Assembly: GCA_021613535.1 (NCBI GenBank)
Contig: CP075493.1
Coordinates: forward strand, 9,114,001 to 9,178,000
Length of the DNA: 64,000 bases
Direction of reading: 5' to 3'
Source of the DNA: Adineta vaga
Lineage: Eukaryota > Animalia > Rotifera
Positions 56,338-64,000 of this stretch are shown here, one piece after another. The notes beneath the pieces were generated by a model. The model was not told where the DNA came from. It did no database searches and saw nothing but the letters and a program-made list of their open reading frames with translations. Both the position numbers and the translations under genes were made by a program. Each line of letters begins with the position of its first letter. Within the stretch, counting starts at the first letter, position 1.

Positions 56338-57812
56338 ACATAATAATCATCATAACTAGATAGCATCATACAAACCATAACTTTGTCTCAAGTCATCCAC
56401 ATTGAAAGGTACTATGGATTGAATGCAATGAAACTGACATGAAAGTTGCTAAAAGAGTCTCAATAGTAATTACAATCATTAGTTGTCAAAACGGAAATAC
56501 ATTTCAAAAGAATGCATGATTAATAAGATAATTCTAATGAAAATTTAGAGAAATAGAACTGCGCATAATTCACCATGAATGTTACTTATTACCTAGAATC
56601 TCATATGGAAATATTTTTATTACGAATGTTGGTGAGATTTTACTTTAATAAGTGTATGATCTGAGAAAAAGCAGTTGATGTTCTTTCAAACTTATATAGA
56701 AAAGACCGTTGTTTTTAGAAGAAAAATGTCATCTTTTACTTTATAATTGTATTGATTACAATCGATGTCCTGTTTCGTTTACTCAATATATCTGCTTTAT
56801 TTGTATTACTTATATGCCATTTATTGGTTTCATTTACTATTTTCGACCTAGGGATAACTTTTTGATATTAAGATCTCAATATTTCTCTAGAATACTATAA
56901 TCATATGGAAATTTAAAGTTCATATTTTGTAGATGAAAAATATGGATTGTTTAGGAAATATTTTAAATAAATACTTCATAAATTAGGTCATATATTAATC
57001 ATATTTTTTCACACAAGAAAAGAATAGAAGTAATTTTATTTTTATTTTTATGAAAAACTAATGTCGAAAATTCGAATAATAAATATTATTCTCATATAGA
57101 TCAAGTAGATCGTGACATCGAACAGTAGTAGTTCATCTATATTTAATGAAATAAAAAAGAAACGATATCGTAGAGAACAAACATATCAAAATACTTTTAC
57201 ACAGAATTACATAAAAAATTAGCTGCTCTGAAAGGAATCTGTGGAGATTTTTCGGATGAAAGGATGCTATTCTATTAAGTTTTCTTGCGTAGTTCAGATA
57301 GAATAATCAATGGAGACAATCATTCATTCCTACCTCATCATCAGTTAATCCACATATACACACTTTCTTTTATTAAACATATGAGTCGATAATAAACAAT
57401 TATTTTATGCTTAATGAATAACCTATCTAATAGTTTTTTCATAATGTTCAAGATCTGATTGTTTAAAGACGTTTCTGGATTGTTTTTAATATCTATCTCG
57501 AATATTTCTTCAATAATTACATTTTGATTTGTTGATAACGATCAATGCTTTAGGACATTGTTTATAATTAACCTTCATAGTGAAAAATTAAAAGAAGTTA
57601 TCGAGTATAAATTTAATATGATTACACCTTTCAACTGCTTCACATTTTCTCTCTTTGACACGCCTTTTCTTATGCATGAAAATAGAACCAAAAGTTTTCT
57701 TTTAACATATTAAGTAATATTTTCTAAAACAACCCGACAAATTTTACATATTCAATCCGAAGAAAAAGAGAAAAACAACTGCAAAAATGTTAGCACAATC
57801 GATTTGCATAAC

Positions 57813-60273
57813 TTAAACTTTCTCAGCATTAGTAATAATATTTCGTAGTTTTGTTCCATTATTCATTTGTTTTGTTTGATTAACCGAATGAAATGTTAAA
57901 CAACCAGCATGTAAAATAACTAAAACATCATTTGTTAAAAATGCCACTGTCCATGCTAGAAAAGACGAGAAATGAATGATTCGTTTTCTTTATTCAATCT
58001 CTTACGCCATGGTCGATATTGTACTGATTTCTTTTCGCCTTCTGGTCCAATAGCCCAAATCTTTTTATTCCCACCATCGGTAACGATTACTCCATGACTT
58101 ATTGGATCGATTATTAATCGATTCATATTATCGACATTTAATTCATAGAGATCAATACGACGAATAAGTTGACCTATTCATCAAAATGAACAAAGGACAT
58201 CATCTTTTGAAGTATTGAGAGAATATGAAAACGAAAAGAAAAAAAAAGGAATGAACTAATCCTTACCATTCTTTTGTCTTTTTTCAACGAAATATCTTCC
58301 CGGTTCACGTTCACGTCGTTTACCTAATATATAACATGATTGCATATCAACAGCTAAACTTCTGATTTCAACTCCAACTTCAAAATGCATTTGTAATTGT
58401 AATTCATGATCATAGACGGAAATTTTTGATTTATTACAACCTTTTTCTGACCCATAGAAAATTAATTTTTCATCTGATGATACACGTTGACAATTTAGAC
58501 CACGTTCAACAATACGTTCACGTTCAAGTTGTTTCCGTGTTAAATTACATAGATATAATTTACATTCTAATGGTTTTGATGCACCTTGTTTATGTTCACC
58601 AACAATAATTATACTATCATCATGATAAATACATAAATCTTTGATTTCTCCATCAGACCATTGAATTCTCTAAAGAAAGGAAAACAGAAGATAATAATAC
58701 GGTGTTTTTCTCACTTACTTCATTCTCACTTCCATTAGCATCGAATATAATTAATGAACTTTTATCTTTATTATAAAGTAAAATTAAATCATTATTTGTT
58801 ACAGCTAATATTCCCCAATCATAACTTTGTGCTAAAGGAATTTTCTTATGAAATTCATTATTACAAGTATCTAGTTTGGAATGAAATGTTGTTGATAAAC
58901 GATTTAATGTGGATGAAAGTTTAGCACTATTTAATGATAATGAAAGATCAGCAATTGAATTTGACATGGTTTTTGACATGATGGTATTGCATGATGGTGT
59001 CTGAGAACGTTGTTGATTGGCAGTAACTCGTGGAGAAGATGCTTGATGAATTGTATTGCCATTTGATACATGAATTGAATGATGTTGATTTTGAGCAAGT
59101 ATATTCAGTGATTTATAATGGTTTCCTTTACTATTCACATGTTTTTTTATTCCTCGACCATTTGCAGGTGTTGATGTTTTAACGGGTTCATTATTTGATG
59201 AAGACGATGTTGAACTAGTTGAATCTAGAAGCAAAACAGAAAGATGTATATGAAGACAAACGAATGTTTTCTTTTTTTTTACCATCAAGATGTTGTATTC
59301 TTATTGAACCGGACAATGTTGATAGATGATTTTTTCCATTACCTAATATTAATTCATCTGTTTGTGATGGTGAATCTACTTGATTAATTCGTTTTTTCTT
59401 TTGTTGAATATCTTCACTATCAATTTCGAAAATTTTCATATTCGGTATATGTTCATGAAAGAAATCATTTGCATCACGGATATCTTCTTGTAAATGATTT
59501 AATTTTATTTGTAATTGTTTAAATTGTTCAATTGTTGACCAATCAGTAATCGTTGTTCGTAAACCTTGTATTGTTTTTGAGATTTGTTCACAACGTTCTT
59601 TATATTCTTTGATAATTAATTCTAAATCATTATTCCATGCTAATGTTTGTCTTTCAACAATTTCTTCATTAGTTAATTGTGCACGACGTATTTCATCAAT
59701 TAAATGTGTGTAATAATTTTGTATCACATCAAGTGATTTTTGACGAACTTCATTAAGTTTCCCACGTGCATGATCAATATTATCATTCATATTTAAATAG
59801 TCTTGTTCTAATGTATTGATATTATTAGTTAAACTCGTTAATGTTTCACGTCGATGTTGATTTGCACATTCAAAACAAACAAATGAACAACAATGTGAAC
59901 ATTTGACAAATGATGGTGATTGATTACAAACTTGACATTGACCAGTAGCTTCCACATGAAAATTACAAGATTTTATTAAATCAAGTACAGTTTGATTCAA
60001 TGGTAAATCAGTTATATGAGCAATTGTTGAACAGATTTCTTTTCGACAATTTTTAACTGGACAAAAATGTAGATATTTACCTTTCCATTCATTTTCTAAA
60101 CAAGTTCCACCTAGAAAACATATACGATCAATTGTATTGATTCAAACAAAAGAAAAACAATTACAAATTGTATGGCCACAGTTGGGCAAAACTCGTGGTT
60201 CGACATAACGTTGCAAACATGATGGACAATTTACTAATGTCTCAAGAAGATGATGAGGTATTGCTGCTGCCAT
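57813..60273 (-). CDS. TRIM-like protein: RING + B-box-like + coiled coil + C-terminal beta-propeller (NHL-like), multi-exon
   Basis: MAAAIPHHLLETLVNCPSCLQRYVEPRVLPNCGHTICGTC..FCPVKNC (RING); CQVC..CSHCCSFVCFECANQH (B-box-like); long heptad region; short beta-strand repeats (DWGILAVT, LAVD, RPWTVAF). Confidence 0.8.
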
Positions 60274-62132
60274 ATATATATATATATACTGAAAGAAAAT
60301 AAAACAAAACTTCGATTACTGTATATATATATACATATAATAAGTGGGAGGTGAAGTGCTTGCCATTCTTCTTACCTATGAGAAAGAAAAAGTAATAGTG
60401 CTCAAAGGTATAAAATAACCATTTCTCTTCTATCTCAACGGTTCATCTCTTTCTCTCTCTCTCTCTTATATATTATAATTTTCATCGGTGTGAATATTTG
60501 TTCAAACAAAGGCAAGCGAAAGAGAGAGAGAGAGAAATATACGATGAGAACGAAAAAGAAAATTTTTTTATATACATGAATGTCATTATTCTTGATGACA
60601 GGATATCCGTTTCTTTCTTCTTTTCATCACATTTATACGTCGTAATCACTTGTTCGAACTCGAGTCACGCTTGATTTAACGATAGGGAAATGAGATGCGA
60701 GAAGAAGTAGGTGATAAACATAAATGGATTTATATTGTATTTGTATATATACTTTGCATGACAGATGTGAATCTTTCTTATCCATATATATGTTTAATGA
60801 GTATGTTCACAACGTGACACTAACATTGAAGTCATACTAACGAACAAAGAATAGTTCATTTGTCGGTATTGCCAATTTGCAATGTACAAAGACAATCAAA
60901 TGTTGATATTGATGTTTTTCTTTTTTAATAAAACAAAACCATATTCTTAACAAAGCTTGTCATCAATTGTATTTGTATGGATTTGAAGTGTGAATATGTC
61001 TCAATTATCTTTGATCAAACCGCAAAGAAGATATGTCATTTTTTTCTGACTTTCAGAATACTCTGTATCTTTATACACAGATATCTAATGATTAATTAGA
61101 TGAAATAATGATGTATGAATGTCAAGAGACAAGTAAATAATCATTGAACATTTAACTGAACGTAAAGAAAGATATTAAAGAACTCGAGACGTGTCAAATA
61201 TAAAAGTGTAGACAAACATACTCACGAAAACTTAAAGTATTCTTTTTCAATCGAATGAATAGAGATGTATAATTGTCACAATTGACATTAAAGTTATTTT
61301 TGCAATTCTATATCGAGAATAAAGGTGTATGATAGACTATTGAATGTATTAGTCAAAAATAATTATTTGATTGTGAAAAAAGAGGCAAATATCGTATACA
61401 TGTAATTTTCGAAAAACCTGTTGATAATGTTTTTGAGACATAAAAAGAACTATAAGACGATTTCTTCTATATAATGAATTTTATTCGAATGCAAAGCAGT
61501 AGGAATTAATTTTTCAAAAGAAAAGATTCTTAACACCTTCTGATCATAAATGTATGCTTTATTAAACATGAGACAATTCATTGATAGAATTATTTATTAT
61601 ATGTATCTAATTCATGCATATATTGAATGATGAATAAAAATATGTCTAGCAAACAGCAGTAGTTGACACCTTTTCAAAGTTCATACATTCTCTCTCTCTC
61701 TCTGTCTCTATTCTTACGAGCCTATGAGAAAAAGATTGTCATCGATAATGTTGAATTTTATCATCGAATACGTATGACAGGTCATTTAAATCAATTATTT
61801 TTGACACAATATGATGGTAAAATTTTGTCTTTAGTTAACCTCAGCAGATGGTTTCTATTTCTAAGAAATCAATAAGATATAAGTTAGATCTATTCAGAAT
61901 TGCTTCTAATGAGAAGGAAGGTGTTATTTTCAGTTATGAAATCTTAAGTAAAAGATGAGAAGAAACTACTCAATATTCAGATGACTTTCTTACATGTTCT
62001 AATCACATTGCTAGCGTCAAGATGTTCAAATGAATAGTTTTTATTTCGACAATACATGAAAACGAATTTTTTTGTATTAGAAAAATATGACAAGTTCATC
62101 GATGATCACATATCATGGAAGTATTTTAATCA

Positions 62133-62864
62133 TTATTGTGGACCTAGAAACACAAAGTTTAAACTCTTGAGATGGTGAAAGAGCGAGGAAAATAATGAAA
62201 CTCACCACTGCTTAAGTCAGTGACTCGTAAATTAGCTAAATACTGTCTAGTTTCTATTGACTTTTGTGCTGATTTGAAGCCTCGACAATCTGGATCATAG
62301 CATTTTTGGTAGTAAACATTTTTAATCGGATCAACAAGTAAATAGACTCGATTTTTCTTATGATTTCGTCGAACATTTTCACAATATCGATAATTTCCTG
62401 TGATTTCCACTCTATACAATCCATGTCATTAGGTGGATGAACTTTTCGAATTTGACCACCATGTTCTGCCAGCATATTCGTTAAAAAGCGTTCAATATAT
62501 GCATGTTCTCGAGGCATATGTTGATTTGCATCCACGTTTTCATTTGCTGTATGGAATTCTACATCACTATTACAAAGATCATTGCAAGCCTTTTCAGCAG
62601 CTGATTGTTCTGCTGCTTTTTTTGATGGAAAATTATCGTTTCCGATGTACCAACGTCCATTTATTTCAACTTCAGCCTAAATGATTTGTGTTTCACTCAT
62701 GACGAGAAGGATAGATATAATTCAAGTGTTAAACGTACCTGAAAAGATAGTTGACATAAAGCATTTGATTGTTGTTTAAATCGATAATTAGGCATTGGAA
62801 GTTGGTTTTTTTGACAATGTTCTTGTAAACGGTTTTTCCAAGATATTTCAATTCCCATTGCCAT
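62133..62864 (-). CDS. dsRNA-binding domain fused to a PrimPol/UL52-type zinc finger; one frameshift near 62424 (possible pseudogene)
   Basis: Exon 62864-62739 MAMGIEISWKNRLQEHCQKNQLPMPNY..F plus exon from 62676 AEVEINGRWYIG..SKKAAEQSAAEKAC form a dsRBD. Then IERFLTNML..GGQIRKV and, in a shifted frame, YRYCENVRRNHKKNRVYLLVDPIKNVYYQKCYDPDC (C-x6-H-x19-C-x4-C). Confidence 0.78.
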
Positions 62865-63751
62865 CGTTATTCGTAACTGTTTACTTATATGTTATTTTAT
62901 ACACTTACTAGAACTCGATTGATGATATTCAGAGATGTTTCGATAATTTAGGTACGTGTGATTTCGTACGATCAGATCATTTTTTATTTTGTTATTTCGA
63001 AACTGAAGTAGAGTAAATACATAAGATACGAGCGAAAGTGGGTTTTTTTAATGAATCACAATTTATAAACACTTGTTTACTTCCACGTAATCACGTTAGT
63101 TTTCATTGAACGATTGAATATTTTACTATTTAAATGATCCAATAGACATAGTCGATAATTCTTATCTTAATCACGGTAGATATTTTACCATATTGATTGT
63201 TTAAATGAAACAAAACTATAAAATGGCATATAGTATAGAAAACAAGTGACATCTTTTTCCGTTGTTTATGGTTATAGCTTTATTATATTTATTTTTTTGT
63301 TTCTTTGTAAATTTTATTGTTATTTGCAAGAATATAACATTATACTTAATTTAAAAAGCATGACCATTTCATCTTCAAACTCGATATATCGACTATAATT
63401 TCTTTGCTTCCTCTTGCTCTGCATCCTCTCATCAATGCACTATCATAGTTATTTTCGGCTATCTTTCTTTCTCGTAATTTTCTTCGACAGTTTCCTATTC
63501 GATTACATAGAATGCAGTTCCGACTCATTCATAATCGCTAAACGAGAAAAAAGAACGCCGTAAGTCAAAATATGAATTTTCTATTTTCGTCGTAGACATG
63601 TTTTTTTTAATATATTTCACACAAGTCTTATTAGACTATCAATAACAGCGAACAAGAAAAAGTTTTTGACTAATCATTACAGTAATAATAACAACAAGAG
63701 AGACACACATATCCACATGCTATACAAAAATTAACAGAGATCATTGACGAT

Positions 63752-64000
63752 TTATAATCGTGAATTGTCATCTAAAATAGAAAAGAAGAGAGGAGAATAA
63801 ACAATTCATTCTATTCTTTTACCATCCTGAGGAGCGGCACGTTTACGACCACGAGTAGCAGTTGAAGTTCGAGGTTTAGTTCCATGTCCACCGCCTGGTT
63901 CATCATTAAGAATACGACGATAGTTTATCAATGGTTGCCAAGCATCACCATCAATCGTTGCATTATGAACAAGTTTATCCACATGATCATAACTGAAAAG
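63752..64000 (-). CDS. Probable 3' end of cohesin subunit SA/STAG (gene continues beyond window)
   Basis: Exon reads HVDKLVHNATIDGDAWQPLINYRRIL..RGRKRAA, resembling the STAG C-terminal W.PL.SYR.SL motif followed by a basic tail. Short last exon DDNSRL* at 63771-63752. Confidence 0.55.

What the first reader, a model, noticed from the sequence alone, without database searches (positions are those of the whole stretch)
62133..62864. dsRNA-binding domain fused to a stand-alone PrimPol zinc finger, with no primase catalytic domain
Seen: two spliced exons the ORF track misses encode a canonical dsRBD (KNRLQEHCQK..PxY..F..V.I.G..KKAAEQSAA). It is followed by the PrimPol C-terminal module, both the preceding helix/GG.IR segment and a Zn knuckle with C-x6-H-x19-C-x4-C spacing. 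The corrected protein is ~200 aa and has no AEP polymerase motifs. Known: PrimPol uses this UL52-like finger to bind ssDNA template and start primers; dsRBDs bind A-form duplexes. Inference: the fusion could recognise R-loops or RNA:DNA hybrids (duplex plus displaced ssDNA), or link RNA silencing to DNA repair or transposon defence. I know of no described protein with this architecture, but could not search. This copy is interrupted by a frameshift.
Basis: partly seen in the sequence, partly recalled or inferred. Interest (0 to 1): 0.85.

Follow-up and report, generated by a model that had tools for sequence, protein, structure and literature searches.

The report
Rotifer dsRNA-binder with primase zinc knuckle
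Bdelloid rotifers carry an intact, expressed and apparently undescribed gene that joins a double-stranded-RNA-binding domain to the part of the PrimPol primase that grips 5'-triphosphate ends, with no enzyme attached, which suggests (untested) a sensor for triphosphate-ended double-stranded RNA made by viruses or by the animals' many RNA-silencing polymerases.

Summary
The architecture is real; the frameshift is not. In Adineta vaga this three-exon minus-strand gene encodes a 202-aa protein: a dsRBD plus the PrimPol/UL52 C-terminal zinc module, with no AEP catalytic domain. All four sequencing runs laid show one extra base behind 62426 on every haplotype, so the break is an assembly error at a heterozygous site. 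RNA-type contigs splice both introns and bridge the two domains. A syntenic ohnolog on chromosome C4 (noted earlier by this scan, s1-489702) and orthologs in Adineta and Rotaria share the architecture under purifying selection; a Didymodactylos fragment belongs to the family. No fusion was found outside bdelloids or in papers. Host PrimPol is a separate, complete gene. The R-loop reading is weak: the PKR dsRBD rejects RNA:DNA hybrids, and the human PrimPol finger binds 5'-triphosphate rather than ssDNA. Its key arginine (R417) is kept in 83 of 86 family members. Best hypothesis (about 0.45): a non-catalytic adaptor for 5'-triphosphate-ended dsRNA from RdRPs or viruses. Function is untested.

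The parts
62739..62864 (-). Exon 1 (codons 1-42): ATG and first half of the dsRBD (helix 1 with LQE; region-2 loop lacks GPxH in this copy)
   Evidence: Pfam dsrm 1-24; RNA contigs
62677..62738 (-). Intron 1, 62 nt, GT-AG, phase 0; same position in all homologous loci examined
   Evidence: spliced in X13 and X14
62575..62676 (-). Exon 2, second half of the dsRBD with the KKxAE region-3 motif
   Evidence: Pfam dsrm 35-66, E 5.2e-5
62270..62520 (-). Exon 2, PrimPol C-terminal module (helix, GGxIR strand, zinc knuckle), residues about 95-178
   Evidence: Pfam Herpes_UL52 E 3.4e-9; PrimPol profile match E 1.7e-21; model of the ohnolog
62285..62389 (-). Zinc knuckle: R139 (= human PrimPol R417), C141, R146 (= R424), H148, Y154 (= M432), C168, Y169 (= H447), C173
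   Evidence: sequence; conservation counts; PMC10415149
62426..62427 (-). Apparent frameshift: one base missing from the assembly at a heterozygous site (codon 126, Ala or Val)
   Evidence: insertion in all 4 runs, every haplotype seen
62144..62205 (-). Intron 2, 62 nt, GT-AG
   Evidence: spliced in X14; matching loose ends in X13
62133..62143 (-). Exon 3 coding part, ending in the stop codon; 3' UTR covered by RNA contigs to about 62039
62865..62992 (-). 5' untranslated region covered by RNA contigs; contains an in-frame stop, so no upstream catalytic exon

Best explanation
A conserved, bdelloid-wide, non-catalytic nucleic-acid adaptor. SHOWN: intact spliced gene with RNA-type contigs; dsRBD plus PrimPol-type zinc module joined by a flexible linker; no AEP domain; purifying selection; ohnolog pair with a short form (this window) and a long form (C4) that adds a FYVE-like zinc tail. 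INFERRED: the dsRBD holds an A-form RNA duplex while the zinc knuckle, through the R417-equivalent arginine and two aromatic stacking residues, grips a 5'-triphosphate at a duplex end beside a single-stranded template overhang, as it does in PrimPol. Together these would recognise the de novo initiated product of an RNA-dependent RNA polymerase still paired to its template, either from the expanded bdelloid RdRPs or from RNA viruses. The protein would stabilise initiation or hand the duplex to Dicer/Argonaute or a nuclease, with the long form's tail recruiting partners. The window copy is the tail-less, less constrained partner and may bind more weakly or tune the long form.
For: Intact and spliced. 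Family in Adineta, Rotaria and Didymodactylos with conserved synteny and intron position. dN/dS 0.10-0.47 in most pairs. The long-form dsRBD has all three RNA-binding motifs and superposes on HYL1 dsRBD1 at 0.9-1.0 A. The human PrimPol finger needs R417 to bind a 5'-triphosphate duplex (PMC10415149). The equivalent is R in 83 of 86 distinct family modules, against 55 of 68 in true PrimPols. The R424 equivalent, proposed there to be structural or to contact the catalytic domain, is relaxed to 66 of 86 against 68 of 68, as expected if the catalytic partner is gone. Bdelloids average 38.9 RdRP copies against 2.5 in monogononts (PMC7943196), and about 24 RdRP loci are seen here (my count). Nematode RdRP products are triphosphorylated short dsRNAs (PMC7695165).
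Against: No binding data. The triphosphate role was shown for DNA duplexes in full-length PrimPol, not for an isolated module on RNA. R417 may be conserved for structural reasons, and the family members are closely related, so the counts are not independent. No paper found shows 5'-triphosphate small RNAs in bdelloids. No RNAi gene lies next to it. The window copy lacks GPxH and has 13 nonsynonymous to 9 synonymous variants among runs. The two domains have no fixed relative pose in the model (pTM 0.47).
Confidence: 0.45

Rival explanations
1. Generic Dicer/RdRP cofactor of the HYL1/DRB/R2D2/RDE-4 type. The dsRBD binds dsRNA or a partner protein, and the zinc module is a plain single-strand or protein-binding surface with no triphosphate specificity.
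For: The dsRBD is closest in sequence and shape to plant DRB/HYL1 and RNase III domains. The short forms have a degenerate region 2, as protein-binding dsRBDs often do (own knowledge).
Against: It does not explain the near-invariant R417 equivalent and aromatic stacking positions. Known cofactors have 2-3 dsRBDs (own knowledge).
Confidence: 0.22
2. DNA-side factor: binds triphosphate-bearing RNA primers on DNA or R-loops, or acts in trans on PrimPol priming during repair after desiccation.
For: The module's native ligand is a 5'-triphosphate primer-template. Human PrimPol's catalytic domain cooperates with a separated C-terminal domain (section title in PMC10415149). The host PrimPol has K rather than R at the 417 position.
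Against: The PKR dsRBD does not bind RNA-DNA hybrids or dsDNA. The PrimPol finger is not needed for ssDNA binding. A. vaga has complete PrimPol ohnologs with their own fingers on C3 and C6. The R424 equivalent is relaxed.
Confidence: 0.17
3. Decoy or restriction factor against the PrimPol-encoding elements in this genome (called KDZ transposons in earlier scan notes), competing for their primed intermediates.
For: Four AEP+finger copies outside the host gene exist, three nearly identical. A shared origin of the finger with them is not rejected (AU p 0.62).
Against: A shared origin with the host PrimPol is not rejected either (p 0.53). The dsRBD has no clear role in this model. The gene is old and syntenically stable.
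Confidence: 0.06
4. The family is functional, but this short ohnolog is a decaying duplicate with little role.
For: Loss of the tail and of GPxH; many nonsynonymous variants, including R12L in helix 1.
Against: The short clade is shared by A. vaga, A. ricciae, A. steineri and R. sordida (99/92), sits at the same locus in Adineta, shows dN/dS 0.26-0.45 against other members, has no stops or lost zinc ligands among variants, and has RNA-type contigs in two studies.
Confidence: 0.1

Closest known systems
Eukaryotic PrimPol (CCDC111) C-terminal zinc-finger domain, Pfam PF03121 Herpes_UL52
   Same: CHCC knuckle with C-x6-H-x19-C-x4-C spacing, the preceding helix and strand, R417 and R424 equivalents, aromatic or His residues at 432 and 447.
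   Different: No AEP domain, so it cannot prime. KS after the His is mostly KK/RK. It has an N-terminal dsRBD. UniRef's automatic name 'DNA-directed primase/polymerase protein' for these proteins is a misannotation.
dsRBD cofactors of small-RNA pathways (HYL1/DRB1-4, TRBP/PACT, Loquacious, R2D2, RDE-4)
   Same: Small non-catalytic dsRBD protein; domain closest to HYL1/DRB (about 40% identity, rmsd about 1 A).
   Different: One dsRBD only, followed by a primase-derived zinc module and, in the long form, a FYVE-like tail.
RIG-I-like receptors and C. elegans PIR-1 (5'-triphosphate dsRNA sensors)
   Same: Hypothesised logic only: one part binds duplex RNA and another binds the 5'-triphosphate.
   Different: No helicase, CARD, RIG-I C-terminal domain or phosphatase; unrelated domains. 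Any likeness would be convergent.
Primase large subunit p58/PriL C-terminal domain
   Same: A non-catalytic module that holds a 5'-triphosphate primer end as a separate polypeptide (PMC5934617).
   Different: Fe-S fold, serves DNA primase, no dsRBD.

Membership tests
PrimPol (AEP primase-polymerase) | AEP catalytic core with motifs DxE, SxH and hD | tested here: not met
   202-aa product with no room for it; no family member has the motif I and II pair; in-frame stop upstream within RNA contigs
PrimPol (AEP primase-polymerase) | UL52-like CHCC zinc finger | tested here: met
   PF03121 E 3.4e-9, 36.9 bits against cut-off 21; four ligands invariant in 45 aligned members
PrimPol (AEP primase-polymerase) | Triphosphate-binding Arg417 and Arg424 equivalents | tested here: met
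   R139 and R146 in this copy; 83/86 and 66/86 in the family. Sequence only
PrimPol (AEP primase-polymerase) | Being the genome's PrimPol ortholog, or half of a split one | tested here: not met
   Complete intron-containing PrimPol ohnologs on C3 and C6
Type-A (RNA-binding) dsRBD | alpha-beta-beta-beta-alpha fold and Pfam dsrm match | tested here: met
   Window halves hit dsrm; ohnolog E 1.1e-18; model matches HYL1, Z 13.3, rmsd 1.0 A over 72 residues
Type-A (RNA-binding) dsRBD | Region 1 Glu and region 3 KKxAK-like motif | tested here: met
   LQE and KKAAE in this copy; KKEAE in long forms; motif definition from PMC11309768
Type-A (RNA-binding) dsRBD | Region 2 GPxH loop | tested here: not met
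   Absent in the window copy and degenerate in other short forms; present in the long forms
DRB/TRBP/R2D2-type Dicer cofactors | Two or three tandem dsRBDs | tested here: not met
   One dsRBD in every full-length member
DRB/TRBP/R2D2-type Dicer cofactors | Physical association with Dicer or Argonaute | not testable with these tools
   needs pull-down
RIG-I-like receptors | SF2 helicase plus RIG-I C-terminal domain | tested here: not met
   No such Pfam hit in family members
RIG-I-like receptors | Selective binding of 5'-triphosphate dsRNA (works like) | not testable with these tools
   inferred only from residues
FYVE domain (tail of the long form, not in this window) | Double treble-clef zinc fold | tested here: inconclusive
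   Top rows are FYVE and Slp-type fingers, Z 5.4-7.1, under the tool's trust level; Pfam FYVE E 0.24
FYVE domain (tail of the long form, not in this window) | Basic R(R/K)HHCR phosphoinositide-binding motif | tested here: not met
   Absent from the alignment

The most novel reading that the evidence does not exclude
Bdelloids built a helicase-free sensor or initiation factor for 5'-triphosphate double-stranded RNA by moving a DNA primase's triphosphate-binding zinc module onto a plant/RNase III-like dsRBD. It would serve their expanded RdRP silencing or antiviral defence, convergent with RIG-I and PIR-1.
Probability: 0.4. Interest if true: 0.85.

Novelty: new variant of a known kind. Interest (0 to 1): 0.68.

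Why it matters
It gives a natural stand-alone PrimPol zinc module, a domain with no match among solved structures here, which makes its triphosphate-binding role testable away from the polymerase. If it binds triphosphate-ended dsRNA, it is a new route to RIG-I-like recognition in an animal and a concrete handle on how bdelloids run their unusually large RdRP/Argonaute system against transposons and viruses. It also corrects two database errors: a false frameshift in the A. vaga assembly, and the label 'primase/polymerase' on the family.

Tried and rejected
Pseudogene: rejected by reads. Chance neighbouring of two genes or a model artefact: rejected, since the C4 ohnolog has the second dsRBD half and the finger in one open frame and many species agree. 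Split PrimPol: rejected. Mobile or viral gene: no phage match; two viral contigs match the dsRBD only; introns and synteny are stable. A remnant of the Cys tail downstream in the window: none. PDB sequence search with the finger: nothing. ESM Atlas feature searches: no usable hit; the Atlas structure search returned only separate PrimPol and dsRBD clusters. Origin of the finger (host PrimPol, element PrimPol or foreign): unresolved. RIG-I C-terminal domain search in the genome: blank but uninformative, as no control rang. Paper searches for bdelloid+PrimPol, PrimPol+zinc finger+dsRBD and UL52+stand-alone+dsRNA-binding: 0 papers. The joined spliced window protein was never sent to a search tool.

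Full report
1. What is in the sequence. On the minus strand the gene has exon 1 (62864-62739), a 62-nt GT-AG intron, exon 2 (62676-62206), a second 62-nt GT-AG intron and a short exon 3 ending in a stop at 62133. Searched piece by piece, exon 1 matches Pfam dsrm positions 1-24 (E 4.9e-4), the start of exon 2 matches positions 35-66 (E 5.2e-5), and the distal frame matches Herpes_UL52 (E 3.4e-9). The knuckle is C141-x6-H148-x19-C168-x4-C173 in a 202-aa product.

2. The frameshift is an assembly error. Four runs from four studies were laid on 61700-63200. Each shows one extra base behind 62426. In the two DNA runs and in X14 both haplotypes have it, G on one and A on the other; X13 shows the A haplotype only. 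This restores the frame, gives Ala or Val at codon 126, and makes the segment collinear with homologs. The assembly also mixes the two haplotypes around this site, as expected where a consensus dropped a heterozygous base. The RNA-type contigs splice intron 1 (both runs) and intron 2 (X14). One 622-nt contig runs from 62992 to 62310, through the dsRBD and the first two zinc ligands. These runs are contigs and their RNA status is the tool's guess, but the splicing argues for transcripts; they give no expression level or strand. An in-frame stop lies upstream of the ATG within the contigs' span, so no catalytic exon is hidden upstream.

3. Genome and relatives. The genome is Adineta vaga: the C4 paralog is identical to I4U23_018087/UJR30558.1. 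Window 47.7-74 kb is collinear with C4 3.139-3.173 Mb, so the two genes are ohnologs. The C4 copy is intact and adds a 12-Cys tail. Full-length dsRBD+finger proteins occur in A. ricciae, A. steineri, Rotaria sordida, R. socialis, R. magnacalcarata and R. sp. Silwood 1 and 2. A Didymodactylos carnosus fragment has the finger and tail, but its 807-nt contig does not reach the dsRBD. Gene order STAG - TBCB - gene - RING is kept in Rotaria Silwood1, A. steineri and A. vaga C4; the short form in A. vaga C1 and A. ricciae has STAG - gene - RING. Intron 1 sits at the same phase-0 position in all loci examined, including a very divergent metagenomic one that is also next to TBCB. The finger tree makes the family one clade (95/99), with short (99/92), long (95/97) and third (97/90) subclades; the short clade spans Adineta and Rotaria. 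dN/dS is 0.10-0.47 in most pairs for both domains; two dsRBD pairs with the A. steineri short form reach 0.8, and synonymous sites are near saturation. The search of 1.84 billion representatives drops sharply from the family to ordinary PrimPols, and none of the non-family hits among the top 150 has a dsRBD. All named members are bdelloids. Monogonont and other genomes could not be searched directly, so 'bdelloid-specific' is likely, not proven.

4. It is not PrimPol. A profile of 48 PrimPols finds a complete, intron-rich host PrimPol pair on C3 (7.499-7.501 Mb) and C6 (8.958-8.960 Mb), plus four nearly intronless AEP+finger copies that earlier scan notes place in KDZ transposons. The fusion is neither, and no member has the AEP motif pair. 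Whether its finger came from the host gene, the element or elsewhere is unresolved (AU p 0.53 and 0.62).

5. Domains. The AlphaFold model of the C4 protein (mean pLDDT 84) has three confident domains joined by disordered linkers. The dsRBD superposes best on HYL1 dsRBD1 (Z 13.3, rmsd 1.0 A, 39% identity). Its profile scores plant DRB, RNase III and giant-virus dsRBDs at 44-60 bits, against 28 or fewer for other A. vaga dsRBDs. That hints at a foreign or archaic source, but the comparison is biased: the outside set was picked by this profile and the endogenous ones are cut by introns. Long forms keep all three RNA-binding motifs (E, GPxH, KKxAE); the window copy lacks GPxH. The finger module has no clear match among solved structures but matches predicted PrimPol and giant-virus primase models. 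The tail is FYVE-like in fold (Z up to 7.1, middling) without the lipid-binding motif.

6. Mechanism. In human PrimPol, ssDNA binding does not need the finger; it is needed to hold the 5'-triphosphate of the first nucleotide (PMC5934617). R417A and R424A abolish binding to a triphosphate-ended duplex, and modelling puts R417 on the triphosphate, M432 and H447 as stacking residues, and R424 in a structural or catalytic-domain contact (PMC10415149). In the family the R417 equivalent is R in 83 of 86 distinct modules, position 432 is aromatic in 85, position 447 is His or Tyr in 82, and R424 falls to 66 of 86 against 68 of 68 in PrimPols. That is the pattern expected if the triphosphate pocket was kept and the catalytic contact released, though related sequences are not independent. 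The PKR dsRBD binds dsRNA but not hybrids or DNA. Combining the two, the simplest ligand is a 5'-triphosphate RNA strand paired to an RNA template, which is an RdRP product. Bdelloids have greatly expanded RdRPs (38.9 copies on average, PMC7943196; about 24 loci here by my count), and triphosphorylated RdRP duplexes are what PIR-1 and RIG-I sense (PMC7695165). This step is inference, at about 0.45. Rivals are a generic Dicer cofactor (0.22), a primer/R-loop or PrimPol trans-factor (0.17), a decoy against element PrimPols (0.06) and a decaying duplicate (0.10). The window copy shows 9 synonymous and 13 nonsynonymous variants across the runs, none at a zinc ligand or R139 and none a stop, so it is probably under looser constraint than the long form.

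7. Novelty. The proteins are in databases under automatic names only, and no paper in the held library links these terms; the library omits most subscription journals. Both domains are known, while their union and a free-standing PrimPol finger appear undescribed. I class it as a new variant of dsRNA-binding adaptor, with a real chance of being a new kind of sensor. The scan had already noted the C4 copy (s1-489702); that note is not independent support, but the locus was checked here.

8. Limits on method. Full-length searches used database proteins (P0006 and others). A joined model, with X/NNN at the assembly gap, was built only inside local scripts for dN/dS and trees; host PrimPol exons were joined there too. 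Viral contigs and element-borne genes were only observed.

Noticed in passing
G000:C4:3152854-3154061 (L002:674-1881): Intact ohnolog I4U23_018087 with an extra 12-Cys FYVE-like tail; the better-conserved copy for experiments.
   Followed up: yes
window 63806-64000 (-), continuing into L011: 3' end of a STAG/SA cohesin subunit gene. The TBCB gene that lies between STAG and the fusion gene on C4 is absent on C1, and not called at the A. ricciae short-form locus.
   Followed up: partly
window about 57800-60280 (-): RING/B-box/coiled-coil (TRIM-like) gene, the conserved downstream neighbour in Adineta and Rotaria.
   Followed up: partly
G000:C3:7.499-7.501 Mb (L044) and C6:8.958-8.960 Mb (L045): Host PrimPol ohnologs; both have Lys rather than Arg at the position of human R417.
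   Followed up: partly
L003, L004, L006 (C3) and L005 (C1:18.06 Mb): Nearly intronless PrimPol-like genes with DxD in motif I, three almost identical; earlier notes place them in KDZ transposons.
   Followed up: partly
L080:2983-3636 and L081:1448-2131: Viral-collection proteins with a similar N-terminal dsRBD (45-54 bits to the family profile); L080 has a weak PIN/NYN match behind it; no zinc finger.
   Followed up: partly
L043:1253-1878: Very divergent family member (about 38% identity) from a metagenome, with the same intron and TBCB upstream; probably a distant bdelloid or other rotifer lineage, useful for dating the fusion.
   Followed up: partly
L048:10001-13163 (P0218, A. steineri): Gene model joining the dsRBD and half the finger to EF-hand/ZZ (dystrobrevin-like) domains, off the usual synteny; either a model merge or a rearranged copy.
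   Followed up: no
window 62976-63200: No contigs of the two DNA runs lay on this stretch upstream of the gene at 90% likeness; may be filtered records or a divergent haplotype region.
   Followed up: no
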